From Trichoplax adhaerens (taxonomy: Eukaryota > Animalia > Placozoa), in the NCBI RefSeq assembly GCF_000150275.1, contig NW_002060943.1, positions 11,656,878 to 11,720,877 of the forward strand: DNA of 64,000 nucleotides, read 5' to 3'. Below are positions 2,372 through 21,825 of this stretch, piece after piece. The notes beneath the pieces were generated by a model, which was given only the letters and a program-made list of their open reading frames with translations, did not search any database and was not told where the DNA came from. Numbering within the stretch: position 1 is the first letter of the stretch; each line of letters begins with the position of its first letter. A program made the translations under genes and the position numbers.

Positions 2372-5300
2372 ATGACAGAGTCAGAGTTCTCGGTGAAAGC
2401 GCAATACTCCAAATCCAACCGGTCAATATGCAAGATTTGCCATAAGAAGATTGGCAAAGGTTCTTTGAGATTAGCTCTTTCAGATATGGTTAGTTCAAAG
2501 TAAAATTTTCTATAAGGATGTTGGACAGTGGTTATTAGTAAATACGAGTACAATAGCATGTGTATTGCCATGGGTGCACTATGCTGGTCGATGCAACTCT
2601 GTTTGCTAAACCTGGTACACTAGTTACGACTCTTTATTGTAGCCAATATTGCAAGAGTGTCAGAAAGAACAAATAGGCAGTCAGCGTTTCAACTTCCATT
2701 GCAATAGCCGATGTGAACTTGAAAAGTTCAACCGTGATAGTTTAAAATAAGATTTAAAATATACATTTTGCACACAATAAGATTGATTTATTGATCGACG
2801 CTGCTAATGCCCCCAAAATACAGCTCTTTGCCAACCCATATACTGCATATACTTATACAATGCACAAAAGCTGAGGTCTACACTCAAGTCTGCAGTATCT
2901 GCACAGACTGCATGCCACAATTGTCCTAGTCTGCTGCATACTGCATAGTCGCACACAAAATAACACCGTTTCTTCTTCGTCATCTGCTACACTAGTGCAG
3001 TACCTACATCTGCAGCAAGTCTACACTATCTGACGATGATGATTCAATATCATGCATGACCCTCAAGTCCATCAGAATGCTATATTGCAATCTCCGCTGC
3101 TGTATCAATTTTACAGTAATCCATATGTGAATTATCACGGATTTAACAATGCAAATATTTTCAACTTTGCTGTACAACTGCTGACGACATACGAAACAAA
3201 TGGCTACCATCTTCCTACATACTTGTCCACGTACATAGCCATAGGTTGTAAACAACGATGCAAAAGTATCAAAATTTCTCAGGGTTCATAGTACTGTACT
3301 GTATGTACAGTATGCACCATCATAGTAATGGAAATAAATGTGCAAGAATGCATAGTTCAGCATATTATACTGTAGGTATAATCAAAGTTGAACCTTAAAG
3401 GATGCAAATCTAAACGATGCTGATGATGCAATAATCACCTAATTAATTGAAACTAATGCAGTCTACGTAAATATTAATTTAACCAAAGTGGACCAATGTT
3501 ATTGCGAAATAACGGACATGACTAAACAACTATGCAATGGAAATTGAAGTTGAATATTCTTTTTCGCTAAATTTCAATCATGAATCAATGATTAACCATC
3601 CAAATTATAACAGACACTAGTTTGGAATCACTGTGGTTGCTTCTTCAAAAAATATACGCTGCCCAATGTAGAAGAAATTGATGGTTTTGCTACACTGCGA
3701 TTGGAAGATCAAGAGAAAATTAGGAAATATATAGCGGCAGATATTGAAAATGCCGCCAGTGAATACGTTGAAGAGACTGAACATCTCGATCAAGACCAAG
3801 ACGACTTACTTATCAGCTACGTCCAAAAAGATTGTGAGAAATGTACCAAATGTCAGCAGGATATCCATCAGGTCTAGCAGTTTGACAGATATTTTCTGAT
3901 TTCAATGTAGTAGAAAGACTATCCGTTTACATGATCATAAATTCATAAAATATCTGTATATCATAATATATACAGTATATACTCCTAGGTCTTAACGATA
4001 GGGAATTAACCTGCTAGGTTTAACATAGCGATGTAAAGCAAAGCTCTTTTTAATCCAATGAATTATGTAGGGAGAATTATACGTTGGACGAACGTCGTAC
4101 AAGCCACAAAACGGTTCAATGTCTACACCCTCCAACACAACCGACTTCTATCATCCACAGTGTTTTCGTTCTGCATGTAATACGTTAAAAATTGAAAATT
4201 CTATAGAGTCAATAAAAGGATTTTATAATCTAAACAAAATCGACCAGAGTAAATTAGCGGAATTGTTGCGGTATGTCAATATACTATTTGTTAAATGATA
4301 ATTATAATTAGTTAACACTACTATTGATGTGTTGCGGTGAATATACTATCAGTCGAAATGTGATTCCGTTTTCTTTCACTTACAGTATTTATCGATCAGC
4401 ATATTGATCTTACGCTTAGATAAAATGCTTAACCTTAAAATAATCCATAGCATAGATAGTGCTGTATTCTTATGTTCCCCTGCTGGAATGCTAAGATCAT
4501 CAATAGTAGGCTTTAGAACGCATTTATAGCATAGAGTTCGATGTATTGGATGATTGCATATATTTAAATGATATTAAAATTGATTAGAAGCGATGTTAGT
4601 ATTAGAAAATTATTTATTGATATTTACTTCAACACATGCCAACATAGAGGAGTGACGAATGGAAAAGATAAAAGAAAGCAAGATACTGACGACGATCAAG
4701 TTTCCAAAAAGCCAAAGGTAGATAAAGAAATCTACAAGAGAATGACACTAAAGGTAATTTAGCATATCTGATAATCGTATTGCTGTTTTGTGGCATCTAG
4801 TTACTTAGAAAGTAGTATTGTTTATTATGATAGGAACAGACAGAGCTATTATGGAACATTTATGACAATTTAAGAAGAGAATGTACTCGTGAAGTGATGG
4901 AAAAGATGCTGTTATTTAATAAACAGTATGCTCCTGTTGATGAAACGACTGTAAGTCATCAAATACAGACTAATAATTAATACATGCTTGCGCTAACTTG
5001 GAGGTGCGTCATTAAGCAATAAAATATTTGCATGAACTACCAGATGAAGCTTATACATTGTATATATACAGTATATATCAATCGTTGTTTTCTTATCTTG
5101 CCATTGTAAATTGGTATTTAAGAAAGTTGCTTTCTGATAGATAAGTACTTTTACAATACAATACTGTATATGGGAATACAATGTATTTCTGTTCAGACGT
5201 ACTAATGTCAAGACTATAGATGATATATTTCTTATCATTTCTCAATGTAGCTATATCGATGTTGTGTAGATGGTATGGCGTTTGGTGCATTAAAATGCTG

Positions 5301-8300
5301 TCCTGTTTGCACAGAAGGTCAATTATACTTTGAGTAAGTTTATGTCTCCTTATTGTAAGGGTAATAATAACCTTTTGTACTTATTCTTTTACTGTTGCAC
5401 AAACTATTCTTTCCTTGATTAGCTACAAAATACAGTGCTATACGTGTTTGCGTGCCGGCGACGACAGTTCCTGTCAATATACAACACAGAAACCTGAAAG
5501 AATACCTTGGAAAATACCAGAAGAACGCTACATTCAATCTTCCTTCTTGTACGTTATCACCATTATACTGCTCAAAATAGTTGACTCCTAACCGTGAGAA
5601 TGATTACTTGACAGTGAAATTAGTTTTACCAAGTTTAATACGAATTTTTATCATGTCTATGTAATAGTTAATATGGCTGTATCACGAAGAGATAATTTCT
5701 GTTTGGTTAGGAAACAATTCAAATTTGAACCATATGAAAGGATATTTTTTAACGCAGGCACCACAAATCAGACCGGTTTAAAAGTGAGGTCTTGGACAAT
5801 ATTGAGGTTAATAAACATGTTATTTTTTGATCATATCAAATTCCAAAGGACTCGTTAAAATGCACGACCTATTTTCAAATAGCTGGATTTATAATTAGGT
5901 TTCATTTTTTACTTTATATACAGTATTCGCGCAGTCTAGATCAATTAGATGTAACGATAGAGAGAATACATATATTTTTTTGCGAATTATAATTAACGCT
6001 GGTATTAATGAGATATTGGAAGACTAGAATTTACATAAAGACTTAAAAAGAAAGCTTGTAATTATCGTTAACAATTTAAAATCGAGTTAGTTATAAAGAG
6101 AGCTACTACTTTACATCTTTGACCCACTTATTAGGAAAGACATCATAAAGAAGAAACCTCTAGCCAATTTTCATTTCGCTATTATCGGTAATTCAAACCA
6201 AAATCAGGTGAGCTATAATTTTTTGGCGAGCATTGTATAATGGAATAAATATGATTGATATACGTTCGTGTATAAATATCAATTTAAAAGCGCCATTTAA
6301 GCAGAGCTTTGATTATCACATTTGCTAGATGAAAAAAGAGATTGAAGAATTCGGTGGAAAGATTGATGAGAAAATTTCGCGTAATACTGATTTGTGTATC
6401 AGTTCTCATGGTAATACTTTATGATTAATTGCTTACACATAGCTTAGTTGTATTTGCAAGTCAAGTTGAAGAGTTATACTCTAATTGGCATAAAGCGATA
6501 TCAGGTCAATATTCTATACTCTTTTGGTTTTTATATGAAATTGGATTGATTTTAATAGTTGAAATGATACGAAATAAAGACAAAGTACAGCAAGCTCAAG
6601 CATTAAATCTTCCAGTGGTTAACGAATCATTTATTACCGCTGTTACAAATGGCGACTTGAAAAATGTCGCAATGAAACATAATATAGCTAGCTGGACGGA
6701 CGGAAAGGTTTGCCAGATATAAATATGAGTGAATTCTGTCACTATAATGTTGCAATACTGCTGGCAATTGAAGTACCTAATTTCTAGCTTAATTATGCTG
6801 TACTTACGATATGATTAATCGGATAGGGTATCAATATCAAACGCGATGCATCTGGTTAGTTTCGATAAAATTTCATTTCTAATTATATGTAATTATTAGC
6901 ATATTGGTATTTTACAAATTGCCATTTAAAAGTAGTCTATCGTGTAGTACAAAAATTTGATATGATTCTAAAATAGAGTAGTCCTGTAAGTTTCTACCGT
7001 ATTAGGAAAAGGTTTAATTGTTACTTATTTTGCCTTCAGATCAAGTATCTACTAGTATCATTAAAGTAATGGAGAAAACTACGGTGGATCCATTGTCAAG
7101 TGAGGAAGAACTTCAATTTATAATTGTATTGTAGATATTGTTCATGTCCCGTATTACTCATTATCAATGTTGTTTGCAAGACAAGCAAACAACTCTTACG
7201 TTAATGTCTCCATACCCGTAAATTTTGATTATTCTGCTGCTATGGTTTGTAATGATAGGATTAGATGACGGTTATCATATTATTGCTGATGCCAATGGCA
7301 ATATCTATAGTACTGTTTTGGAAGCCAAACACGATACAAGTGACATTTGTTCCTTTTATAAAATCCAAGCTTTGGAACGCCATGATTCTCTTATGTTAGT
7401 GTTGTGGATGTTGATGAACAATGCTCGGATGAGTGCTAATTCTGTTTCTAATTGCTATTGATAATACAGATGCTGTCTCATTGTTATTACCAATATTAAA
7501 CATCAACTAAATGATAAAATAGACGTTATTGTTGAGGTAGGAAAATCTATTTGCACGTCATACTGTGTTGTGATATACTGGATATATTTTAAATATGTTA
7601 TAACATATCATGTTAGGTATAGGATAATTTGTTAAACAATGTATGATAGTGATTGCATTTAATGGTTACGACTTACACAATTAATTATAATAGGATGGCT
7701 ACTCAAAAGAAGAGGTGAAGATGGCTTTTGATGAAAAGTACTTTGAATTGACAGGTACGATTTAAAAAATAATTTAGAGATAAGCAACATCTGATTTTAT
7801 GATAAAAATTTTGCCTTCCTAAGTATTACAAAAATTTATTCTAATTTTAATGTACTGCAGGTAATCGTTTCGAGACTAGCGTGAATTTCAAGAAAAAAGC
7901 TGGTAAAATGTATCCACTTGATACGACCAATATTTATGCCAAGGTTAAATAATAAACATGTTTATATATAGATTCGCTTTATGACACACTGTAACAGACA
8001 AAACTTTAAAGGATAAATTTTATCATATTAGGATCAAGAAATACAGAAATATAACCAAATTATCAAGACTAAAAGCAATAAATTAGAGTCGAATGTAACG
8101 AAACTAATGAAATTGATTTTTGATATCAAGTTGATGAAAAATGCTATAATTGACTTTAAAGTATGATTTCTTTCTTAAATGATTCTACTGTATTTTCGTC
8201 AATGATGGGCATATTATAAACGTGAAAAACTGATTATGTATACTATACGTATTTGGATTACTTATGTTCATTATAGATTGATGTAGATAAGAATTCTATT

Positions 8301-10793
8301 GGAGATCTTACTAAGCAGAGAATTGAGGATGCATCTCAATGGCTTGATACATTAGAGACAGTAAGATTTCTAAGCTAATTATGTAACCTAATGTATTGTT
8401 ATGACATCACATGATTGAATACCTTAGACTCAAGAAACGCATTCCAAGATTTAAAATGTAAGTATTAACTTCTTTAATCCACAACCTTTTGTATAGATGG
8501 TATTGGAGAAAGAGAAGAAACGGGAAATCAAAAAAGCGAAAAATGAATTTACTAATTTAATTGCATTGGACTTGGATTTATCCTCCAATTTTTATCATGA
8601 TAATGTTAACATTATTCGGGTACATTCGATTCTCCAGCTGTTATAGTTGTTATCTGTGTTATAAATTAATGATATGGATATAATTTATGAGTATATATAT
8701 AATATATATATATAATTCGAAAAGCAGATTACTTTAGATTGGAATGAAATTATAAGCCTAATACTGATAATATAGTTGATGAAGTTCAACTAGATCGAAT
8801 TAATGCCAAACTACCGTATCAATTATACTTTTATTACTCATTTATGACCCGCTGATTTGAACCATTCTATGTTTACCAGGCAACAAAATACGATTTGGAA
8901 GACTTGCTGGATATTGTATTTACTTACAATCTTATGAAGCAAGTCGTCTATGTAATGAAGGACCCTCTTCACATGCTGTATAAGAGTTTAAAGACCGACA
9001 TTGAAGTAAGTAATATCGTTTATCCCTCTTTTATGTCATAACTGTTCAATTGCTAACCTTTTTTTACCTTTAGCCATTACAACATGAAAGTAATACGTTT
9101 AAGATCATTCGAAAGTATGCTGAAAATAGTCGTAATCATCCTTATAGCAACTACTTTAAATTAAAAATCGAGGAGGTATGCTGGTCTGATGCAAATTCTA
9201 TTGCTAATATACTATACTTGTATGGAATTACCCACTTATTACGATTGATATACTTATTTTACGGCATGACGATAAATTTACATATTTACCTCCGCGATCT
9301 TTGACAGTTGCTTTTTGTTATATCGTAGGTATTTAAAATCAATAGACATGATGATGATGAAAAATTTCAAAGCCACTCAAGCTATAGCAATCGAATGTTA
9401 TTGTGGCACGGATCGCGTACAGTTAATTCTGCCAGTTTGCTGTCACGGGGGATGAGATTTTATCCTCCAAAGACATCCTCGGTTAGTACAATGACCATCA
9501 CTTTTACTAAAGACAGACCGATAGTTTTCAATTGTTTTAACATTGGAATATTAAAAAACTATTTTTTAGAAAAGATCCTACATGTATGGTAAAGGAGTTT
9601 ATCTGACAGGTATACTAACTTATGATTAAGTACTGTAATTTAGATCAGATTAGCAATCATCGAAAATTAATGAATTACTTGCTATGATCGCTAATGTTAG
9701 TGCTATGTTCACTATTTCATACTAGATATAATGTGGAAGGTAGGAAACTAACTCATGACTTAAATCGGTTAATTTATCCTGGAAGCGATCTTAACTAGAA
9801 ATGATCAGGATGTGCACAATTAGATAACATGTTCTTATTTTGATGGACCGTAATTTCGGCAGAGTGCCATGCAATGTCAAGCCTCTTTCGCTTACCCTAC
9901 TGGTTTATTGCTATTATGTGAAGTAGCACTTGGCAGCATGTAAGAATATGTTGCAAGCTTGTAGCTTCGGTTATGATCTTTTAAAGTGTTCTTATTTAGT
10001 TATCATCAGTTAGCTTCTCTTTTCCTCTTGTTAATTTATGTAGCTAACAGGATGATTTATCATATATATTGCTGTTTAAATAATTTTATCAAAGATCATA
10101 ACTTGCGGCTTAAAACGCTGTTCAGATTATCTGCATGCATGGCGTTGCAGTAAATATTTCTTTGTAGTATGTTATTATGACAGTTATAATTTCTTATTAA
10201 TAGACATGTATGCTTATGTATTTCGTTATATTGTTATGCTCTTTCTATCAGAAATGTAACCAGATTTTAAATTTGTCTAACTTATTTGGTAGGCATGAAC
10301 TTAAAAATTATAAGGATATGGCTAGACCTGTTTTACCGAAGAACACGCATAGTTTTAAACGTATGAATTAACGATCGTATAATTTGAATGTCTTATTGCT
10401 GTTACGGTATAACGATATATCTGCACAGAAATATGAATTACGTAACGAATGCTGTGATATTAAATAGGTATAGGGGACGTAGCACCTGATCCATCTGGTA
10501 ATCATGTGTTAGAAAATGGAATAATTGTACCTTTAGGAGAGATAAAAGGAGTTGAGACAGGCACCAAATGCAATGAGTATCCTTAATATACTTTATCAAT
10601 TCAAACAGATGATTTTGCTCATTTTTAATCTAGTTTATTATAGAAGTTATTAGTATACAAAGACTGATATAGCTTATTTTAACTTATAATTCCTTAATAT
10701 ATTACAAGATATGTCGTTTATGATGTGCGACAAGTAAGAATTCGGTATATGGTTCAAGTGAAATTTAACTTTACTGACGTATCATTAGACTAA
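2372..10793 (+). CDS. PARP1: PARP1-like poly(ADP-ribose) polymerase paralog A (Zn1-Zn2-Zn3/PADR1-BRCT-WGR-HD-ART), multi-exon
   Basis: Exon 1, 2372-2488: MTESEFSVKAQYSKSNRSICKICHKKIGKGSLRLAL. 3614-3871: WNHCGCFF...DGFATLRLEDQEKI...CTKCQQDI. Zn2: YHPQCF. Zn3: DGMAFGALKCCPVC. BRCT: EEFGGKI...LPVVNESFI. Catalytic: MLLWHGSR (9395), YMYGKGVYLTD, LLLLCEVALG, NE|YVVYDVRQVRIRYMVQVKFNF; TAA at 10791-10793. A Zn1 micro-exon in intron 1 was not located. Confidence 0.92.
10577..10708 (+). other. U12-type (minor spliceosome) GT-AG intron in PARP paralog A
   Basis: 5' site GTATCCTT; branch-point TTCCTTAAT (10690-10698) about 10 nt before the AG; no polypyrimidine tract. It splits the GA|A catalytic Glu codon. 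Confidence 0.9.
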
Positions 10794-13243
10794 GTCTTAA
10801 AATGATTTAACTGAAAGGTTCTTAGTATTTTCGAGTTATTCACAATATGCAAAACTGCATTTATTATATATTTATAAAGTACTAAACACTCTAATTCTGT
10901 TTTAAAAGTAAGAATTAGCAACCCGTAATATTTTGTATTATTTTGAAAGGTGAAAATGTTGACGGTATCGTGTGCATTGTAAATACTACACACAATACAT
11001 GAAAATTTAGCACTATCTAATGTTGCTACCTCAATCCCAAGTATGTGCACTCATATACTTCTAAATGTTATTAAAACATGGCACTGCGAACGTTAATGAT
11101 TGTAAACCGTAAAAATGTTTTCAAAAACTTTACGTCACTACCTGATATTTTCTAATGCAGCCAAGCCAAGATCAATAGTAAATTAAATTTTACAAGAAAT
11201 TGCTTGTAGGTACAGTTTAGAATATCTGATTTAATGATTCATCATGATTCGTCCGTTCAAATTTTGTATCTGAGATTGGTTTAATTTATTGTTTAATTTG
11301 GAATCAAAATAACAAAATGATGTTCTTTACTCGATTGCTGTTGTCTGTCATGTCGTTTATGTTTACTCGAAGTGGGATAATCTGCATTAGATGATTATAA
11401 TTAACTCGTATACATAGGTATGAGTTATGATAATACGTACAACAGTACAAAGAGTAATGTCTAAGTTATTGTTACAAATCTCCTTTGTAACTAGAAAACG
11501 GGTCTTAAACACTATCTTCACTAGTACTCGTGTTCCCAACTAACTTAGGGACCTATCGTAGTTGAACTAACTCTCAGCTACACAAATAAGCTACTAATGA
11601 TTAGTTACGTTAATCTTAGTCGTAAAATGTACTAAAGAAAAACGTAAGAATATTCTTAGCAGTAATAATCAAGTGATCCTGCAAGTGACGGAATGGAACT
11701 GAGCAGCTAAGCTAGTGCTCGGCTTTTTATAGTCTCGGCCTACGCCGATGGTGCACTGGTGAATATTCTTGACATAGCGACTTACACTGTACAGTATACA
11801 TATCCTAGTATACGAATTCAGTTATAAGAAGTTAACATAGATCGGTATAAGTCAACGCTAATTAACATTAAATGAATTAATGAGCCAACTAGAGCCTCAA
11901 GGCTCTGCAACGTAATTGCACCTTACACTTAAGGTGTTATCAATTGACGTTTACTGACTAAGCGTGTTAGCTCCGACACGTCAACAATATTGAACTTTCT
12001 GATGCCTTGGTAATAACAAGTACTTATTAATAAACATGAATATCTAATAAGCTACTGGAGCAAACAACAATATATAAATGAGATATTATAATTAACATAG
12101 CAATCAATATTTCGAAGCATGGCTCCGTAACAGTTATTAACAAGGATGCAAAACCTGAAATGTACTTGAGCGGAAAATAAAGTCAGTTACGTTAGACTAC
12201 TTAAGTGTTGAGCATTAGATCATACACTTATTAGCGGTACTATCGACCTAACAAGTGCTATTGGTAATTAGCGTCGGCTTTTCCAAAAAAACATGTGTGC
12301 AAGCACTTAAAACGGATATTGCTAAAGCTACGCATTTTTGGCGTTTCTGTATAGCGTGCACTTCATTATGACATGAATACATTGCGAAATATTTATTGTT
12401 TTGTAATTTTACAAGTAGAAGTCTTAAGCAACAAAATCGCTGCAACTCTTGATAAAAAAGAATGGAGCATTAATTAAATCGTGTACATTTGTCTCAATGA
12501 ACAAAGAAAGTTACAGAATTTTTAATCCGTAATGTATTGCCTAAAAGGAAGGTTCGTGACAAAGAAAGATAATACAGCTATATAGGATCATCATCCTAAT
12601 ATTACCGATTAAGATCTTGCTATAGTTGCACGGGTTAAAGTTATAAAATCAAAGTATGAAGTCTTGCACTTCTCAGGAGAATAGTTTTTAGATATAATAC
12701 CTCTAATATCTTTCTAACAACAAGTTTGCTGCAAGTAGAAAAATTTAAGAATAGCTCAGTTCTGATCTTGGTGTAATATGTAATCTATTTGTTTTATGTA
12801 AAGAAGAGAATAAACTAATTAATTTGTATGATATTTTAGTCTTGCAATGATACAGATAACATTTCGTACCGTTGAAACTGTTTAAACACTTTTCAGAACT
12901 GTGCTTTAACTATAAAAATAAAGCCTTAATACGGTAACTCTCTGAGTGTCCTAAGAACTAACACCGTGAACAGAAGTCATATTCCCAAAATAAAAGGATC
13001 AAATCACTTAACAGAGAATTTTTGATTTAGTTGTTGCCAACTTCGTAATTTTCAGTATACAAGTATTATAATGTAATAATATTTAGTTCCAAATGATCAC
13101 GGCTAAGAATTAAATCCGAAGTTCTTTCAAAATTATTACATATTTCTATTTAGCAACTTTTTTATAGTGTTGTTTGTTACGTAACAGTTGACATAGGTAA
13201 TTATGATATATTAAATAAGTAATAAAGAATCTAGCATTAAATA

Positions 13244-16200
13244 CTAATGAAACAGGTCATTCCTGAAATTAGCTTTCGCTTTCACCAAGTACCTAATCTG
13301 CAATTGTCTCGTATCATAGACGACATAGCTGAGATAATTGTTAAGTCTCAATAGATATCATTTTCTAAATTAGTATATAGTGCTATCGTAGAATACACAT
13401 AGAAAATAGAGAAGAGATGTATAAAGATACTCATTTGCACCCGATCCATTATTGTCTTTTGTCATTTTTCCTAAAGGTACAACAGTGCCATTCTCGAGAG
13501 TAAATTTTTCTGATGGGTTCGGTATAAATTCGCCCGGACCTATATCATTTCGAAGTACACAAAGTAAATTGACTTTTTTTAATGTTTATACTATACTAGC
13601 GCAGGATGCAATGCTGAGCCACATAATAGATCCAGTAGTCGCACACATGAAATTAATTACTACAATACATTTAAAGCTATTAGCCGTTGCTGGCATTTTG
13701 GGCATTTCATGGCAGTCTGGAAATCTCATTTCATATCTGTTGTAATATAGAAAAGAGTCGTAATTAAGGGTAAATATGTATTACAAGTAAGGTAGATTCC
13801 TTTATTTATCACTAAATATTGCCATATAATACATTTTGCCAAGAGCTACTTCGCAAAGACACATAATGATAGTTGGATTAGTCATTGTTGGTTCACACCG
13901 CTCCGCACACTAAAACGTAGCAAATGCTATTATTAGTAGATATTAGATCAAAGTGATAAAAAGGAAACTAGCAATGTATATTTGGCCATTATCGTCCTAC
14001 CATAGATGCTGAATCTATAATTGATAAGAAGATAATGTCAGTAACATGAGTAAAGAATATGACGTTCGTGAGTTATAATCTAATCGGATTTATTATATCT
14101 TACCAGTGAAGTACACCCCTTTACCGTAGATGTAACTCCTATCCTATCAACAATAATAATTGTATAGCCTCATTATCACAGCACACTTAGAACACAGTGC
14201 TCATTGATTGCTTCAAGGGGAAAGGATCAGTTTATCATAACCAGTGATTATGGATAATACTTACTAAACACGTTTTAGGAGGTGTAAAACGAACGCCCTT
14301 AGATAACATACTAGCATAGCTAGTAAATCGAGTTTGATACCAGAGCAACATCCGATTATTGAAATTTGAAAAGTGCTGATACTGTTTATCTTCTCCATAT
14401 CTTTCAACTTTAAATACCTATGATCAGAAGGTATCTAAGTATAAATTTCTAAAACATTGTTTAGAATATTTGTTAAATGACATTAAAATGTGTGAAATAC
14501 AACTTGTATAAACAAATTAATTGATAAATGGTTAAATTTAAGTCATAATTTAGTCAGTAACCTCTTCAACAGTTAACCAGAAATAATTATGAATTGACAA
14601 ATGGCTATTTTCAGCATAATTCTTTACCATGCCAAATTCTTCACTATTGCTATAAAGATACTACAAAATTTTCATATTTTAGATCATAATTTCATATCAT
14701 AATATTCGTTATTAAAGAAAATTTCTAAAAGATATCTGTACCGTAATTTCGGTCTTTAAGGACTTATACAATGTATCCATAGGATTTTGGCCATCACTAT
14801 TTGCTCTTCTAATTATGTCATAACTAGTAATGATATCCATGAGATCGTCTAGCATGAATTCTTTATCCTAGTAAAAATTAATAAATTGCAAATTAAGTAA
14901 ACTATTCTTGTTGCACTTGATTAAGAAATATATACTAAATTTTATACAACAACCAGAATCAGAATATAACTGGTACGTCTATAAGGTAGACGTAGGAGAA
15001 ATAGGTGCGGTGCATTCATTACTTAATGCAATAAAATATTTAGTTGTAGTTACCTCTAGTTCATATAAATTGTTTATTGTTTCTGGGTCATCTATTCCGA
15101 AATTATGGGGAATTACGGCATAAAATCTATTCACTTGCTCCAAAATTTCTTTTTTATTCTTGCGTTTTGATATAAGCTGTTAGGTCATACGATTTTTTTA
15201 GTATCAAATGATAAAGGCAAGTAGTATATGGACATTGTCAATTTAGTACTCTGTATCCATGGATATAATAAATAATGAAAATATTACGATATTATACTGA
15301 CATTTTGCAACATAGATAGACATTGAGAAGCGTCATTAATTTGGTTCTCAGATAGATCAGCAAGTTTGATTGCCTCCAGGTCAACCTAAGGATTGTATTA
15401 TCTACGAGTTACCTTATGAATAATTAAAATTAATATAGTCACGATTTACTTAAATATCATTGGAATTTGTTACAAATATCGCACCCTGAATTCCAGCAGA
15501 GTATTTTTCATAGCTTGAACATCGAAAATCAGCTTAAGGAGATTTCTTATATGTCGAAACACTTTGCTACCTTTATCTGTAAAGATTAAGTCTACTTGTC
15601 TTCCTTCTTCGTCCTGCATTAACGGTTTGGAAACGAAGGGATTGCTTGTGAGTGAATCTCTACCTACGTGATATAACAACCTCTATACTTACTTTTTCGA
15701 CGTCTAGATAGACAGGATAAAATTTTCGAGCCATCTTAACAAATTTCTTTTCTTTTCCAAATCCATTACCTATACGATAAAGAATTAATATTACTAATAT
15801 CGAACATTATATTTCAGTGATAGTGTTTTCGAGTTCGATAATTAGAAAAAATAAAACTGATATTAATTAGTACCGGTTTTCTCGAAATACATTTGATCAA
15901 ATATTAGCATGGCTTCTTCTTTTGAATACCCAGTCTGTTAATAAATAGAAAAATTTCAATAGTATAATAGCTTATGGTTATATCAGTAATGAGATGAACT
16001 CTGCGTATTCTTTCTATTACTCAATGTCGCCTAACCCATAGGAACAAATAACATTATAATCTTACTTCGACACTGGTTTCTCCTTTCTTACTGTTGACGT
16101 CACCCCATGCATGAAAAATACAGCACCTAGTTTGTCATTATTAATTACAATCAACTAGAATAATAAAACCAAAAATACCTACAATCCAGTTTATTCAGAA

Positions 16201-19200
16201 AAATAGCTTACAGGTTCGTGGTGTTACTCTGCAATGCTTGTATTTTACAATAACTATGATGTCTGTATCCGTTTTCTAGATTTACGCTATAAACTGAACC
16301 ATCTGGCTCCTTAATGACGTGATGTGTATCTAGCAGACCTATTGGATATTATAAAATTTAAAAATTATTAATGTTATGGTAAATATTATAAACCCTTCTG
16401 ACCAAGATTTTATTCTCAGGTCAACAAAACTAGTAGGTATTATGCGTTGATAGTGACAGATATAATGCTACTTCTACACGAAACTATAAAATTGCTCCTA
16501 CCTGATCGATAATCAACAGCAACAGATTCGTTTGAAGTGGTTTTATTTTCAGTTGTTCTTCCTACAAATTTTAAAAGAAAGAAATAGTTCGATATTTTGT
16601 CTTAAAATTATCACATTAGTATCTATAGTCTAAGCCTGCAATACTATAATAAGTGTAAAATTTGGGGTCCAAAATCAAGTATAACCTGACTGTATTTCAT
16701 CAGAATTTGCAGGGGAGGTCGACATGAAAACTCTTTCACGCACTACACTTCTATATTCTCTTCTATTTAAGCAATTAGTCATCGATGGTGGCAATCCCGT
16801 AAAAGCACATATCCAATATTGCATTAAATATAATGTAGGGGTTTGAAATAAAATAGTTATAATTCGATGATAGAGGTAACCGTAGTGTAATTCATAAATT
16901 GATAAAAATAGAACTAGAATTTCTGAATTATAATTGACAATATATCATATGTGCATGTCACTGAACGTACAAATATTTCGATTTCTCACAGAGTTCGTCA
17001 GGAATTTTCCATTGGGTCCTGCTTGGGTTTTGAGTTAAACTATGACACCTGAGACAACGATAGCCATGATCTACTCGGCTGATGACAATCAACATAATTA
17101 AAATGCATGACTTTCAAGATACAAATAAAAAACTTTAAAGTGTTATTATTAGTACATGCTGTATTATAACTATTGTAATCCCGAACATTATCACTCCTTA
17201 ATAAAGCAAGATCATCCATACAAAAATAAAAATGCGAGTTACTTACAGAATGTTTGTATCTATACTAACCTAAAAAACAATATGCCACTGCACTCTTTAC
17301 AAGGGTTTAATGCACCAAATGCCATACCATCAACAACTAAATGAAATCCCTAAAATTAAAGGTATTATGCATTAATAATGAGGTATAAGACACAAAATAA
17401 AATAGAAAAATAACTGTAACTATATGCTTTAAATTGAGTTAAGTATTGTTTATCTACGTACCCTAGTATCGGCTACCAATTTTTGATTATTATATATTAG
17501 TAGATCCTTCAACATTTGATTATTACATTCTTTTCTCAGGTTGTCATATATACTCCATAACCCTACAGTTTGCTCCTGCAGCCAGTAATTATAATTTATT
17601 GGATTATATGGCCAGCACATTTAAACGAAGTGAATCATTTTTAATTATCTAAATATAATGCAATTTATAACGTGTACGTTACGAAATATAACAATTTTAC
17701 GTTCGATCATACCCTTAATTTCATTATTTTGGCCATATTCTCGTCACTTTTGCCTCTTTTATTCGCTATGTCTGTATCTATGTCTTTGCTTTTTCTTTTT
17801 CCTGTATCTTCTTTATTTCTATATTATTAATAAACGATTTAGTAATGTTATCAAACGTTAGTTGAGGCATCCATTAGAAACAAGGGAAACTTTTTGCCTA
17901 TCAATCGTATTTAAATTTCATTTATATTGCTCTTACAAATCTAAATTTGTAACGAGAAACAGTTGAAAACTATTATAGAAATTGCAAAATTATGAGTCTA
18001 CTGTCAGGTTTGTCCACCCTAACATTAACCTACTGTACAGTGTACAGTAAGACTCTAAATACTAACGATCTCCTATCGTCAGGATGAACAGTAATACAAC
18101 ACTAGTCTCTAGACATAACTGAACCCAAACTTTAATAAAAAGTCAGTCAATTTATAGTAAATTGATATAAACATTAATTATCAGTTTGTAATTATATAAT
18201 ATCATAAAACTGTGCAGTTATCTATTAAAAATATGTAAAACATCACAAATAACGGTATGTAAACACATTTCTAGATAAATTATCTTATGGAGTCTACTGT
18301 ACAGTATGTTACGAGAGGTTAAACTGATTAGTAAGATAGATAATCAAATCTTACATCGCTGAATTCGATGATCCTTCTGAAGGAATTTCGTGAGCCTGCG
18401 CTGAAGAGGTGGACGTTTTCGAATATCCCTGATTTTGAGTTGTGGGATCAATTCGATTTCTAATTTTCTCTTGATCTTCTGGCCGCAAGGAATTAAAGCC
18501 ATCAATATCGCCCTCGTTGGAAATATTCTTTTTTCTGAAAAAACAGCTGTAATGATACCATTTTGCTACCTAAGATCAAGGGTGTTTAATCAGTCAGATT
18601 TTGTAGTACTTTCAATGCTTGCATATGTATGCATTAATCCGATAATACATCAAATTAGAAATATCTAAGCAGGGCATCATGATTCATACACACAGGATAA
18701 AATACAGAATAAATTCTAGCTATTTTAATAAAATTGATGATTTTTCAAATTGGAATTATGTACCAATGTGTTAGTATTCTAGTAACTAATTTGTTGAAAT
18801 AATCTACCAACGCTGCACAAGCCTATTATATTAGACTTATATTACAGCAAATAACTTAACATTAATTGTGCACTATCGATTACAATTCTTATAAAATAAA
18901 TGTGACAATAGTAGACCTTACCTTCGCATCGTCAACATACCAAGACTAGACGAATAAAATATAAAATCAATCTGTTAAATAACCTTATAAAACACGTCAG
19001 TTTAAATATGTATCTCCCAAATAAGTAAATATATATACATAGACGACGAAAATTTCGAGAGATCAGCTGTTTAATGCGTCATACTGCAGCTAAATTTATA
19101 CATGCATGTTAATCGGTTGAAATATTATAAAATGTTACCTAATTTACTATAGTAGCAATTTAATACCTTCTTAATCTTTGTACTGTAGCTGTAAATAAGA

Positions 19201-19668
19201 TTAGGTGGGCGCTATGTTTATCGTTTAGCATTGCTTGTATTCGAATTAAGATCATGATTAAAATCAAGATGTACGCGTAGTCATACTGTAAGATATAATG
19301 AGATTAACTATAGTTTGCATTTCCGCTAATTAATCTATCCTAAATCGATATGGCCATAATGCAGATAGTATACCAGTATTTTAGATAATTCGGGTGGCTA
19401 TTACACGATATTCTATTGTAACTTGCAAAAATAATCAATAGCTTAGAAATTGTTAACATTTTAATTTTAGCACGTTCATTTCACATGAATGCACATGTTA
19501 AGCCTTTGTATGAAGTTTCTATTAATAAGAAAATAATTGACAACTTACAGAAAGCATAGCTGCTATCCTTAAAGAATTTTTACCAATATTTTTTTTACAC
19601 GCATTACAAAGTGAACGTTTCGATTTTGCATATTCTGCTTTGAACGGCAAGACATCAGTATCGGTCAT
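13244..19668 (-). CDS. PARP1: PARP1-like paralog B (Zn1-Zn3-WGR-HD-ART; no Zn2 or BRCT; predicted catalytically impaired), multi-exon
   Basis: Exon 1, 19668-19549: MTDTDVLPFKAEYAKSKRSLCNACKKNIGKNSLRIAAMLS. 24-nt exon 18945-18922: SWYVDDAK. Then WYHYSCFF...DGFNSLRPEDQEKI; DGMAFGALNPCKEC; AVDYRSG; NRFYAVIPHNFG; RMLLWYQTR; YIYGKGVYFTD; LCEVALG; ND|YVVYDTRQLQIRYLVK; TAG at 13246-13244. No stops in the exons I translated. Confidence 0.92.
13329..13430 (-). other. Degenerate U12-type intron in PARP paralog B
   Basis: Same position as the U12 intron of paralog A. 5' site GTATCTTT; branch-like GACTTAAC about 11 nt before the AG; splits GA|C. Confidence 0.65.
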
Positions 19669-21825
19669 CTTGTATTTCTATTAAGATATTAAAAAGTAAA
19701 AATGATGATAAACGATTAGAAACGAACCACGGTACAATTTTACTGCATGATACAATAATAACTGTACTGTATGTACAGTACAATAACGTCGTCGAATAGG
19801 CAATCCATTATATCATTATTATTATTAAAGTTTATTAAGATTAAACAGTATCTAGTTTACCCAGTTAAAATTACATGTGGTTATACTGTAACTCATTAAC
19901 AATATAAAATAATGTAATCGATATTCGATCTCAACATATTTATGCCCAGTCAAACGATTCACTTTCGACTACAGATTTAATAATGCTACTGTTGTACGTT
20001 TACTACTTAGTAGCAAGTGTCTTTATTTATTTTAAACAATGTATATCAATTTTTCAATCTGTATTTGTACAGTAGACGACGAGTGGAGTAATTAATTTAG
20101 AGAATAGTTTATTTAAGGAGCTTCCTGGCCTAGTTCTATCGATTTCAAATTGATGATTGCCTCATTGTCTTTGAGATGATCAAATAGAAGGTATCAGCCA
20201 ATCAATCGTCATTTGTAGCGTAGTTTGAAATTGAGTATGTGGAGATGATTTATAGTATGGTTAGAGACGATAGATAAAGTAGCAAGTAGAAAAATCGAGT
20301 ATACTGTTGTGACCAGCCTAATAAATGTACTTTGCTGTATTATTGCAATATGGTGTACAGCATGGGCTGTAAGCTTATGTAGAGAATGTATAAAGAGGAT
20401 TACGTTTCAAAACTATGCCCGTGTTAGTATAACGAAGTTTATGCAGTAACGTATGTGATGAAGCAGCTAGTAGCCTGATACTGTATGCATTAACACAGCA
20501 ATGGGAACATTATTCCAGGCATCAGTGGTATGTGATAATTTAGTTACAGTTTATAGTGGTGACTGCAAAGTTAGAATTAGAAATAAAGCATAATTTGGCA
20601 ATTGTTGCCATTGGTGGTTGCAGACAAAACCTGTACATGATACGTGGTATACTTGTTATGTGTGCACTTCTACAGTAGATCAACAACGACTAAAAAATGA
20701 ATTATAGAACTAGTTAGTGTCATAGAGCTATTGATTTCTCTTTAATAAAGGCAATCAATTTCACTGTCCAATGCAATACAGAATGACTTGTCCCATCTTT
20801 GATCGACTTTTCTTGCATAGCATAAAGCAGACAGCAATATGAATTAATTTGCTATCATCGCTCTAGCGCTGATAGCAAAACTAATTGATCACTTCTAATT
20901 ATTGCTCATTCAACTCGATATTAGTAGACTACCAGCATAAGAGAGAATCAACATTGAATACCAGCGATTCAACTAATTATAACCAACTTGCAAACTAGGA
21001 AGACTGACAAATCGACCATGGTTGAATAGTGTACATGATTCGTACATTACAACAAAACTAAGGTAGTACCCTTGTAGTACACTAGTACAGCATGGTTGAA
21101 ACGTCCATTGAAATGTCATTTTTGAATCATTATGCTATCTTGCCGGTCTGATACCAAAACATAGAGAAATAAAAGATAAAATCCTTGTACAAATTCTTTA
21201 AAGCCTTACAATCCTACTTCAATCCATCTCCATTAGCAATGCTACGCTTAAATCACTTACATGGATAATGACTAATCTGCAAGTATCCAAAGGAAGAAGA
21301 AATAAGGCAATGAAAACTCGTTCGTCTCTGTCAAAGAAACGATGAGCTATGTGCACCTTTGAAGTTGATTTCGTCAGTCCAGAACGGGTCAACCTGGCAA
21401 TGGTATGACTGGTATGGCAGGTCAATGACTAAAAAAAGATCGTCGTTCATTAGAACAATATCATTATTGTCATAGTGATTATTATTATTTCTTAATGATG
21501 TCACGCATGGCATATAAAAAACTACTTGACAAATGAGAGGCAAGCACTCACCCCTCGTAAGCTCTGGCTACAAGTACAGGTACAGGAAGGAGTTTACAGT
21601 AGTAGGGTTAAGAGGCGAGACTAGCGAAGATTAGGCCACCCTGAAAGCAGGGACTTATTGAAAAGAGAGAGAGAAAAGAAGCGGCCGCTCACTGCAAAAT
21701 AAGATGGCACATATCATTTTTCGAGTTATTGTACTATACGCTCCCACTGAAATCGTCGACAGTATTACACTGACAAAAGCGATCAAGCAACTGGATGACA
21801 ATCGAGTTGCAACGGTGAGCAAATA

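What the first reader, a model, noticed from the sequence alone, without database searches (positions are those of the whole stretch)
2372..19668. Convergent pair of rewired PARP1 paralogs: candidate enzyme + pseudo-enzyme ADP-ribosylation system
Seen: two PARP1-derived genes tail-to-tail (3' ends ~2.45 kb apart) with shared intron positions and open reading frames in every exon translated, but complementary remodelling. A keeps all domains and H-Y-E. B lacks Zn2 and BRCT and has a rewritten NAD+ site. Both have lost the DNA-damage allosteric residues and the HD MPLG motif. Known: canonical PARP1 is highly conserved at these sites, and catalytically dead PARPs (e.g. PARP13) act as nucleic-acid sensors or scaffolds. 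Inference: neither is the housekeeping PARP1; they may form a lineage-specific sensor/decoy + effector pair, e.g. in defence or chromatin control.
Basis: partly seen in the sequence, partly recalled or inferred. Interest (0 to 1): 0.85.

Follow-up and report, generated by a model that had tools for sequence, protein, structure and literature searches.

The report
Diverged PARP1 paralog pair in Trichoplax
Two neighbouring, expressed copies of the DNA-repair enzyme PARP1 in the simple animal Trichoplax belong to an undescribed family of at least seven remodelled PARP1 copies; most of these, including copy B here, have lost the catalytic residues, while the normal PARP1 lies about 200 kb away.

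Summary
The window is Trichoplax adhaerens scaffold DNA. It carries two convergent PARP1-derived genes: A (TRIADDRAFT_52697, + strand, 2372-10793) and B (TRIADDRAFT_52698, - strand, 19668-13244).

Both genes are intact, with 29 and 26 exons. RNA contigs from four studies show both spliced exactly as modelled. Both are under purifying selection (dN/dS 0.10 and 0.21 against Trichoplax sp. H2).

A keeps Zn1, Zn2, Zn3, BRCT, HD and H-Y-E. Its WGR domain is no longer recognised by Pfam, and Y907 is Q. B lacks Zn2 and BRCT and has a destroyed NAD+ site (H862Y, G863Q, K903M, S904C, Y907R, E988D).

Three new points:
- A canonical PARP1 (gene C) lies 192-209 kb away on the same scaffold.
- A and B are not a private pair. 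Five more intact A-like paralogs and one decayed copy lie on two other scaffolds. All lack Zn1 and Zn2, and all have mutated triads.
- A and B are not sisters: B branched first (AU test p = 0.0002).

The whole clade lost Zn3 W318, WGR R591 and Y907.

Best reading: this is a Trichoplax radiation of PARP1 derivatives uncoupled from DNA-break allostery, with no closer relative found outside the genus. A is the only possible enzyme and B is a non-catalytic DNA-binding scaffold. A dedicated A+B system is neither supported nor excluded.

The parts
2372..10793 (+). Gene A (TRIADDRAFT_52697) coding region from ATG to TAA. It has 29 exons and encodes 1003 aa in the H2-guided model. The mRNA runs on to about 11334.
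   Evidence: Spliced mapping of P0151. All junctions from 9005 onward are confirmed by RNA contigs of 4 studies, with contigs of 3413-3585 nt. dN/dS is 0.10.
2372..3757 (+). A Zn1 (exons 2372-2488 and 3614-...). The zinc ligands C-C-H-C, R18 and R34 are kept. The base-stacking loop (M43/F44) is missing from the annotated model.
3245..3265 (+). Candidate unannotated 21-nt micro-exon of A (VVNNDAK), flanked by AG and GT. It is homologous in place and sequence to B's micro-exon 18922-18945 and C's SMHFDGK exon. It would restore the Zn1 loop, but without an aromatic residue.
   Evidence: Not checked with RNA.
3779..4270 (+). A Zn2, with the CxxC...HxxC ligands kept.
   Evidence: Second zf-PARP stretch in Pfam; alignment.
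4730..5771 (+). A PADR1_N plus Zn3 ribbon. The four Cys are kept and W318 is lost.
6145..6692 (+). A BRCT domain.
   Evidence: Pfam BRCT E 1.1e-9
7078..7937 (+). A WGR-homologous segment. W-G-R is replaced by K-H-Q and there is no Pfam WGR hit. It is modelled as a four-strand sheet plus helix.
8074..8942 (+). A helical (HD / PARP_reg) domain. MPLGKL reads NSIGDL, and the core leucines are kept.
   Evidence: Pfam E 4.4e-21
8952..10790 (+). A ART (catalytic) domain. The H862 codon is 9407-9409 and the E988 split codon is 10575-10576 plus 10709 (GAA). Y907 is Q, Y986 is C, F897 is L.
   Evidence: splice junctions
11335..12435 (.). Gap of about 1.1 kb between the two mRNA 3' ends. Three of the four runs show no contig here. 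One run (X11) shows shallow contigs as far as about 11,930. No overlap of the convergent transcripts was seen.
   Evidence: tables 2 and 8
13244..19668 (-). Gene B (TRIADDRAFT_52698) coding region from ATG 19668 to TAG 13244-13246, about 778 aa from this ATG. The H2 model adds a 5' exon (19861-19896) and reaches 793 aa. The 3' UTR runs to about 12436.
   Evidence: Spliced mapping of P0152. All junctions from 15054 downward are confirmed by RNA contigs of 2977-3387 nt. dN/dS is 0.21. Residues 1-18 of the 793-aa model have pLDDT < 50.
18426..19668 (-). B Zn1, including the 24-nt micro-exon 18922-18945 (SWYVDDAK). It keeps 20 of 21 residues that are invariant in canonical PARP1s.
16702..17736 (-). 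B PADR1_N plus a shortened Zn3. The four Cys are kept. A 7-residue deletion removes W318.
16443..16701 (-). B linker where BRCT should be. It is about 20 coding residues, predicted disordered. The open frame around the exon still shows a faint BRCT-like remnant.
15699..16523 (-). B WGR domain (W-G-D; R591 is D).
   Evidence: Pfam WGR E 7.6e-9
14805..15571 (-). B helical (HD) domain. MPLGKL reads IKLADL.
   Evidence: Pfam E 3.8e-29
13247..14795 (-). B ART fold with a dead NAD+ site. The Y codon at the H862 position is 14337-14339. G863Q, S864T, K903M, S904C and Y907R are present. The E988D split codon is 13432-13431 plus 13328 (GAC).
   Evidence: the junction 13431|13328 is seen in RNA contigs of 4 runs

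Best explanation
A and B are two functional members of an undescribed radiation of PARP1-derived genes, found so far only in Trichoplax.

Origin (inferred from the tree). A duplicate of the animal's own PARP1 first lost the residues that relay DNA-break detection to the catalytic domain: Zn3 W318, WGR R591 and the M/P of MPLG. It also lost the nicotinamide-stacking Y907. It then split by a local inverted duplication into the B lineage and the A lineage. The A lineage later seeded five more intact copies and one decayed copy on two other scaffolds. Those copies lost Zn1 and Zn2 and, independently, the catalytic His and/or Glu.

A is the only member that keeps the ancestral full domain set and H-Y-E. 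It is probably a weak, or mono/oligo, ADP-ribosyltransferase. Its intact autoinhibitory helical domain must be released by something other than the canonical Zn1-Zn3-WGR relay.

B cannot bind or use NAD+ in the normal way. It keeps a nearly canonical Zn1, a Zn3, a WGR fold and the HD-ART scaffold. It most likely acts without catalysis, as a nuclear DNA- or chromatin-binding protein that competes, regulates or adapts.

The tail-to-tail layout is most simply a relic of the old duplication, not a sign of a two-part machine.

Shown here: gene structure, expression, selective constraint, phylogeny and residue states. Inferred: the activity of A, the DNA binding of B, and any role in the animal.
For: Identity: P0001 is TRIADDRAFT_52697 of T. 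adhaerens. P0012 is TRIADDRAFT_52698, and P0151 and P0152 are the H2 orthologues in the same convergent layout.

Intact genes: 29 and 26 open exons.

Transcription and splicing: every predicted junction in 9000-14999 is present in RNA contigs of four studies, including both 14-nt micro-exons. Contig lengths fit full-length mRNAs.

Constraint:
- A: 2 non-synonymous against 5 synonymous changes (dN/dS 0.10, p = 0.004).
- B: 6 against 7 (0.21, p = 0.007).
- D3 against D4: 0.31 (p = 1e-21).
- A decayed copy, D0, shows what a dead member looks like.

Canonical PARP1 elsewhere: gene C at C1414:11868393-11876685. Its H2 orthologue P0246 has all 7 Pfam domains.

Family: D1-D4 on C1389 and E on C1399. 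E's H2 orthologue P0295 has no zf-PARP.

Tree: (C,(B,(A,(E,(D1,(D3,D4)))))). Support is 100/100 for the Trichoplax clade, 100/100 for the divergent clade and 100/99 for A+E+D. A and B as sisters is rejected (p-AU = 0.0002).

Residues. PDB sequence matches rank PARP1 above PARP2 above PARP3.

Folds: all retained domains are modelled with high confidence. B's Zn2 and BRCT places are disordered linkers.

Range: no closer relative was found outside Trichoplax among 5.8 billion proteins.
Against: - No biochemical data exist. A's Y907Q, Y986C and F897L could make it inactive too, in which case no member of the clade would be an enzyme.
- The H1-H2 comparison rests on only 7 and 13 substitutions.
- No genome of another placozoan genus could be reached, so the age of the clade and the long-term conservation of B's dead site are inferred only from paralogue depth.
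- The 5' halves of both models rest on the H2 annotation and on contig lengths, not on junctions seen here.
- The complementary pattern of losses (A lacks WGR and the Zn1 loop; B lacks the catalytic site) and the retained adjacency are also what a cooperating pair would show.
Confidence: 0.68

Rival explanations
1. Dedicated enzyme plus pseudo-enzyme system. B senses a nucleic acid with its conserved Zn1, Zn3 and WGR. It then activates or targets A in a heteromer, much as dead 'prozyme' paralogues activate their catalytic partners.
For: - The losses are complementary. B keeps 20 of 21 invariant Zn1 sites and the W-G of WGR, while A keeps H-Y-E, Zn2 and BRCT.
- Adjacency is conserved in H1 and H2.
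- Both mRNAs are present in all four RNA runs laid.
Against: - B is not A's sister. Triad loss arose at least three times in the clade, in genes that are not next to A.
- Both genes lack W318 and R591, the known relay.
- The genes are convergent with separate promoters 17 kb apart and no transcript overlap.
- H1 and H2 are too close for conserved synteny to mean anything.
- The only interaction test gave no verdict, which is not evidence either way.
Confidence: 0.12
2. Conflict-driven family. The radiation is a fast-evolving nucleic-acid surveillance or defence set, like vertebrate PARP9/13/14/15. A and B are two of its members, tuned to foreign or aberrant nucleic acids rather than to DNA breaks. 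This overlaps with the best explanation and does not exclude it.
For: - The family shows birth-and-death dynamics: tandem copies D1 and D2 with dN/dS 0.61, a decayed D0, and dispersed copies.
- Branches are long.
- The same NAD+-site positions were replaced repeatedly and differently: H862 to Y, L, N or K; E988 to D, K, Q or R.
Against: - No site-wise test of positive selection was possible.
- No immune-type domain is fused to any member.
- There are no expression data after infection or damage.
- dN/dS is below 1 in every pair tested.
Confidence: 0.15
3. One or both genes are decaying pseudogenes, or A is simply the animal's working PARP1.
For: The old JGI models were truncated (873 and 749 aa). 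A 2010 survey held both genes only in a supplementary file of partial catalytic domains.
Against: - All exons are open. Both genes are spliced and transcribed, with dN/dS of 0.10 and 0.21.
- A true pseudogene copy, D0, looks quite different.
- A canonical PARP1 exists.
Confidence: 0.03

Closest known systems
Canonical animal PARP1 (human PARP1; gene C of the same genome, JGI 19562, H2 orthologue P0246)
   Same: - Common descent: A and B nest inside the animal PARP1 clade as sisters of C.
- They share the exon-intron structure.
- They share zf-PARP, PADR1, HD and the ART fold.
- PARP1 is the best match among solved structures.
   Different: - W318, R591 and Y907 are lost, and MPLG is altered, in both.
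- A has no recognisable WGR motif or Zn1 stacking loop.
- B has no Zn2 or BRCT, and no H862, G863, K903, S904 or E988.
- Retention of sites that are invariant in canonical PARP1s is 31 and 29 of 50 in ART, and 14 and 20 of 27 in HD.
Catalytically inactive PARPs (PARP13/ZAP with Y-Y-V, PARP9 with Q-Y-T), from general knowledge and PMC2964712
   Same: B has Tyr in place of the triad His, as PARP13 does. It lacks the catalytic Glu yet keeps the ART fold and nucleic-acid-binding zinc fingers.
   Different: Those proteins belong to the mono-ART clade 3, with CCCH or macro domains and no HD. B is a PARP1-clade protein that keeps the HD, WGR and PARP-type zinc fingers. Citarelli et al. state that in Clade 1 only land-plant Clade 1D members have an altered triad.
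Trichoplax JGI 61730 (paralogue D3 here), placed in 'Clade 1C' with Phytophthora in PMC2964712
   Same: It belongs to the same radiation as A. It carries the same derived motifs and the acidic C-terminal tail.
   Different: With full-length models and the other paralogues included, D3 groups with A, B and E next to Trichoplax PARP1. The published placement with oomycetes therefore looks like a long-branch effect. D3 lacks Zn1 and Zn2 and has N-Y-Q.
Enzyme plus dead-paralogue heteromers ('prozymes', METTL3-METTL14 type), from general knowledge
   Same: One copy looks active and one looks dead. They come from one ancestral gene and are encoded side by side.
   Different: No interaction has been shown (one search gave no verdict). 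PARP1 catalytic domains are not obligate oligomers. The dead state recurs in five unlinked paralogues.

Membership tests
Canonical DNA-break-activated PARP1 | Two N-terminal PARP-type zinc fingers (Zn1 and Zn2) | tested here: inconclusive
   A meets this: Pfam finds two zf-PARP stretches and the ligands are kept. B does not: it has one stretch and Zn2 is absent.
Canonical DNA-break-activated PARP1 | Zn3/PADR1 with four Cys and the relay residue W318 | tested here: not met
   The Cys ligands are kept in both genes. W318 is substituted or gapped in A and removed by a 7-residue deletion in B. B's PADR1 ribbon scores only E 0.069 in Pfam.
Canonical DNA-break-activated PARP1 | BRCT / automodification region | tested here: inconclusive
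   Present in A (E 1.1e-9). Absent in B, where a disordered linker of about 20 residues takes its place.
Canonical DNA-break-activated PARP1 | WGR domain with W589-G590-R591 | tested here: not met
   A has K-H-Q and no Pfam WGR hit at E <= 1. B has W-G-D and a Pfam WGR hit at E 7.6e-9.
Canonical DNA-break-activated PARP1 | Helical (PARP_reg) domain before the ART domain | tested here: met
   Pfam E 4.4e-21 (A) and 3.8e-29 (B). L698/L701-type hydrophobic residues are kept.
Canonical DNA-break-activated PARP1 | H862-Y896-E988 triad and NAD+ contacts G863, S904 and Y907 | tested here: not met
   A keeps H, G, S904, Y896 and E, but Y907 is Q. B has Y, Q, C, Y, D and Y907R.
Canonical DNA-break-activated PARP1 | Orthology to animal PARP1 | tested here: not met
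   They are in-paralogues. The orthologue is gene C, and A and B sit on long branches beside it.
Canonical DNA-break-activated PARP1 | DNA-stimulated poly(ADP-ribosyl)ation | not testable with these tools
   Needs a biochemical assay.
Pseudo-PARPs (non-catalytic ART-fold proteins) | Loss of the NAD+-binding His and the catalytic Glu, with the fold retained | tested here: met
   B only. It has H862Y, E988D and four further pocket changes. The ART fold is modelled at pLDDT mostly above 85. Pfam PARP scores E 2.4e-43.
Pseudo-PARPs (non-catalytic ART-fold proteins) | No NAD+ binding or transferase activity | not testable with these tools
   Needs a biochemical assay.
Enzyme / dead-paralogue heteromer | Specific physical complex of the two proteins | tested here: inconclusive
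   ESMFold2 gave ipSAE 0.00 in both runs; the tool's verdict was 'no answer'.
Enzyme / dead-paralogue heteromer | Co-expression in the same cells | not tested
   Both mRNAs are present in whole-animal RNA contigs. The held single-cell supplement did not contain the gene ids.

The most novel reading that the evidence does not exclude
Placozoans rebuilt PARP1 into a break-independent nucleic-acid surveillance family. A would be the only writer. The catalytically dead members (B, E, D1-D4) would be sensors or regulators that gate it. B, with its near-canonical Zn1, would work directly with A.
Probability: 0.1. Interest if true: 0.8.

Novelty: new variant of a known kind. Interest (0 to 1): 0.55.

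Why it matters
PARP1-clade proteins are regarded as almost uniformly active H-Y-E enzymes (PMC2964712). Here a single early-branching animal keeps, beside its normal PARP1, at least seven expressed or intact derivatives.

In these derivatives evolution has removed one part of the allosteric machine after another. First went the W318/R591 relay and Y907. Then, in different copies, went the zinc fingers, BRCT, the WGR motif and the catalytic residues.

That makes the family a natural dissection series for two questions:
- How do the helical-domain lock and DNA sensing depend on each other?
- What can a PARP1 scaffold do without catalysis?

The work also corrects the published placement of one member with oomycete PARPs, and it gives full-length models for two genes that earlier surveys held only as partial catalytic domains.

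It does not by itself open a long-standing question, and function remains inferred.

Tried and rejected
- **Complex prediction.** A(505-1003) plus B(330-793) gave ipSAE 0.00 in both runs and no verdict. The alignments were not used by the tool. This is not evidence for or against binding.
- **More distant placozoan orthologues.** All three homologue searches returned only T. adhaerens and Trichoplax sp. H2 proteins. A deeper dN/dS and a test of long-term conservation of B's dead site could therefore not be done.
- **Literature.** No paper holds the locus tags. The Trichoplax-plus-PARP papers do not discuss these genes. The held supplement of the placozoan cell atlas lacks the ids. The Hoilungia genome paper does not mention PARP.
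- **Large tree.** The 33-row careful tree did not finish in two runs. A 20-row careful tree was used instead; the 13 rows left out were D2, further bilaterian PARP1s and unnamed metagenomic rows.
- **Contig look-up.** The look-up of encoding contigs on P0001 found nothing.
- **Pseudogene reading.** Considered and rejected.
- **Antisense regulation by convergent overlap.** Considered and rejected: the mRNA ends lie about 1.1 kb apart.
- **Joined models.** Searches used the single-exon reference window:9329-9481 and database proteins (P0001, P0151, P0152, P0246, P0295). My joined models were used only in offline scripts.
Full report
**What the window is.** The window is G000:C1414:11656878-11720877 of a 105.6-Mb assembly in 1414 contigs. 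A 51-residue exon of gene A (window:9329-9481) hit a 100%-identical database protein, P0001. That protein is TRIADDRAFT_52697 / B3RJW1 of Trichoplax adhaerens. Gene B is TRIADDRAFT_52698 (P0012). Trichoplax sp. H2 carries better-annotated orthologues: P0151 (1003 aa) and P0152 (793 aa), in the same convergent layout on one contig.

**Gene models.**
- I wrote a protein-to-genome spliced aligner and first tested it on the canonical gene.
- Guided by P0151 and P0152, gene A maps as 29 open exons (2372-10790, + strand, 1003 aa, 2 residue differences from H2). Gene B maps as 26 open exons (19896/19668-13247, - strand, 793 aa, 6 differences).
- The stop codons are 2.45 kb apart.
Searches used one exon by reference and database proteins; joined models were used only in offline scripts.

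**Expression.**
- One 6-kb stretch (9000-14999) was laid with RNA contigs of four runs from four studies.
- Every predicted junction of A from 9005|9074 to 10576|10709 is present. So is every junction of B from 13328|13431 to 14867|15054.
- This includes the 14-nt micro-exons 9726-9739 and 14001-14014, and the junction that creates B's Asp codon.
- Contigs of 3413-3585 nt (A) and 2977-3387 nt (B) fit full-length mRNAs.
- The 3' ends lie near 11334 and 12436, so the convergent transcripts do not overlap.
- Contigs cannot give expression levels or cell types.

**Constraint.**
- Against H2, A has 2 non-synonymous and 5 synonymous differences (dN/dS 0.10, binomial p = 0.004). B has 6 and 7 (0.21, p = 0.007). 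Introns differ at 0.4-0.6%.
- The counts are small. However, the two genes are only 14-47% identical to each other by domain and have kept 26-29 exons open, which needs long-term selection.
- A decayed relative, D0, shows the alternative: most exons are gone and the rest are full of stops.

**Domains and residues.**
- Pfam finds in A two zf-PARP stretches, PADR1_N, the PADR1 ribbon, BRCT, PARP_reg and PARP. It finds no WGR even at E <= 1.
- In B it finds one zf-PARP stretch, PADR1_N, a weak half ribbon, WGR, PARP_reg and PARP, and no BRCT.
- I aligned both to an echidna PARP1 whose numbering matches the human numbering I recall for Zn1 and from WGR onward. Results are:

| Feature | A | B |
|---|---|---|
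| H862-G863-S864-R865 | H-G-S-R kept | Y-Q-T-R |
| Y889, K893 | kept | kept |
| Y896 | kept | kept |
| K903, S904 | kept | M, C |
| Y907 | Q | R |
| E988 | kept (GAA) | D (GAC) |
| Y986, F897 | C, L | gap, F kept |
| W589-G590-R591 | K-H-Q | W-G-D |
| Zn3 W318 | gone | removed by a 7-residue deletion |
| Zn1 stacking loop | absent from the model | present (SWYVDDAK micro-exon) |
| Zn2, BRCT | present | absent |

- MPLGKL reads NSIGDL in A and IKLADL in B, so the buried leucine positions survive.
- Retention of sites invariant in 18 canonical PARP1s:

| Domain | A | B |
|---|---|---|
| Zn1 | 17/21 | 20/21 |
| Zn3 | 14/16 | 14/16 |
| WGR | 6/10 | 6/10 |
| HD | 14/27 | 20/27 |
| ART | 31/50 | 29/50 |

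- AlphaFold2 with a 50-row alignment models every retained domain confidently, including a WGR-like sheet and helix in A. It leaves B's Zn2 and BRCT places as disordered linkers. These models lean on the canonical rows of the alignment.
- B's HD-ART matches solved PARP1 (E 1e-80) ahead of PARP2 and PARP3.

**A canonical PARP1 exists.**
- Genome-wide Pfam scans found a third zf-PARP / PARP_reg / PARP gene on the same contig, at 11868393-11876685 on the - strand.
- Its 29-exon, 966-aa product carries every canonical motif.
- Its H2 orthologue P0246 has all seven Pfam domains and lies at the same distance from A in H2.
- It is the JGI 19562 sequence used as the Trichoplax PARP1 by Citarelli et al..
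- So neither A nor B is the housekeeping enzyme.

**A and B are part of a family.**
- The supplementary files of PMC2964712 showed further Trichoplax sequences with A-like motifs.
- Searching the genome with P0151 and P0295 and fetching the loci gave four genes on C1389 (D1-D4, with D1 and D2 recent tandem copies), one on C1399 (E) and the wreck D0.
- All are closer to A than to C, with spliced-alignment scores of 630-738 against 377-442.
- All start at the PADR1 region with no Zn1 or Zn2. No zf-PARP hit falls on those contigs, and P0295 begins 40 residues before PADR1_N.
- Their triads are L-Y-K (D1, D2), N-Y-Q (D3), K-?-Q (D4) and H-Y-R (E).
- Y907, W318 and R591 are lost in all seven divergent genes.
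- D3 against D4 gives dN/dS 0.31 (p = 1e-21). D1 against D2 gives 0.61.

**Phylogeny.**
- A careful mixture-model tree (20 rows, 780 columns, amoebozoan and other outgroups) gives (C,(B,(A,(E,(D1,(D3,D4)))))).
- Support is 100/100 for all Trichoplax genes together, 100/100 for the divergent clade and 100/99 for A+E+D. The quick 33-row tree agrees.
- Forcing A and B together costs 33.5 log-likelihood units (p-AU = 0.0002).
- C has a short branch, so the grouping with C is not long-branch attraction.
- The published placement of 61730 (my D3) with Phytophthora in 'Clade 1C' is probably such an artefact.
- On this tree the His and/or Glu were lost at least three times (in B, in E and in the D ancestor). 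A therefore keeps the ancestral state.
- No protein closer to A or B than ordinary PARP1s was found outside Trichoplax. No other placozoan genus was represented.

**How it most likely works.**
- Shown: both genes are real, expressed, constrained PARP1 in-paralogues. B's NAD+ pocket is dismantled at six contact positions. The clade-wide relay residues are gone.
- Inferred from established PARP1 structure-function knowledge (my own recall, not tested here): W318 and R591 couple DNA-bound Zn1, Zn3 and WGR to unfolding of the autoinhibitory helical domain; H862, G863, S904 and Y907 hold NAD+; E988 drives elongation.
- On that basis A cannot be switched on by breaks in the canonical way. With Y907Q and Y986C it is at best a weak or mono/oligo-transferase, at about even odds of any activity.
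- B is non-catalytic. With a 20/21-conserved Zn1, basic linkers and an intact scaffold, it probably binds DNA or chromatin.
- What either protein does in the animal is unknown.

**The pair hypothesis.**
- The complementary losses and the adjacency fit it.
- The tree, the unlinked triad-mutant relatives, the shared loss of the relay and the separate promoters argue that adjacency is a duplication relic.
- The single complex prediction gave no verdict.
- I put the dedicated-pair reading at about 0.12 and a conflict-driven family at about 0.15. The latter is compatible with the main reading.

**Novelty.** The genes are annotated. Both were held, as partial catalytic domains, in a supplementary file of a 2010 survey. 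I found no paper that describes them, the radiation or its serial triad loss. I rate it a new variant of a known kind, of moderate interest.

Noticed in passing
window 3245-3265 (+): A 21-nt open segment (VVNNDAK) flanked by AG and GT lies in A's first intron. Its 3' half plus donor matches B's Zn1 micro-exon at 12 of 15 bases. It is probably a micro-exon missed by both annotations, and it would restore a non-aromatic Zn1 loop.
   Followed up: partly
window 4588-4753 (+): The H2-guided exon 4 of A is 166 nt. The homologous exon is 106 nt in both B and C, and an in-frame acceptor at 4648 gives 106 nt in A too. The extra 20 hydrophobic residues in the annotated model may be intron sequence.
   Followed up: partly
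window 19861-19896 (-) and 19669-19677: The H2 model of B starts 15 residues upstream of the conserved ATG at 19668, through a short 5' exon. Those residues have pLDDT < 50 and no counterpart in A or C. The real start is probably 19668.
   Followed up: partly
window 16443-16601 (-): The open frame around B's 60-nt linker exon still reads like the first half of a BRCT domain (for example IVSCRSS against IVLCISS of gene C). It looks like a fossil of the lost BRCT exons.
   Followed up: no
G000:C1389:549000-628000 (L004-L012) and C1399:1370000-1376500 (L013-L014): Five intact A-like PARP1 paralogues lie here (D1-D4 and E). They have no Zn1 or Zn2 and carry triads L-Y-K, L-Y-K, N-Y-Q, K-?-Q and H-Y-R. 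D1 and D2 are tandem copies 12.5 kb apart.
   Followed up: partly
G000:C1389:541898-549125 (L018, L004): D0 is a decayed family member. Only a WGR-like exon and the last exon are recognisable, and many stops lie between them.
   Followed up: partly
G000:C1409:5148725-5149918 (-) (L020): An intronless 582-aa open frame encodes a PARP with a SAP-like N-terminus (judged by eye) and Pfam PARP_reg and PARP matches. It has Phe in place of the triad His (LLWFCT) and no Glu at the E988 place (NAYFIY). It is another candidate pseudo-PARP, unrelated to the A/B clade.
   Followed up: no
G000:C1404:352036-352557 (-) (L019): An open frame of 200 aa with no internal stop encodes an H-Y-E catalytic domain that resembles PARP3 by eye. 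It adjoins a masked stretch (a run of X in the translation).
   Followed up: no
L015:4066-4952 (H2 locus, about 5 kb beyond B's start): The next gene past B's 5' end in H2 encodes a 244-aa Spondin_N protein. Upstream of A lie dynein light chain, a UbiE/COQ5-type methyltransferase and DENR. No neighbouring gene is related to ADP-ribosylation.
   Followed up: no
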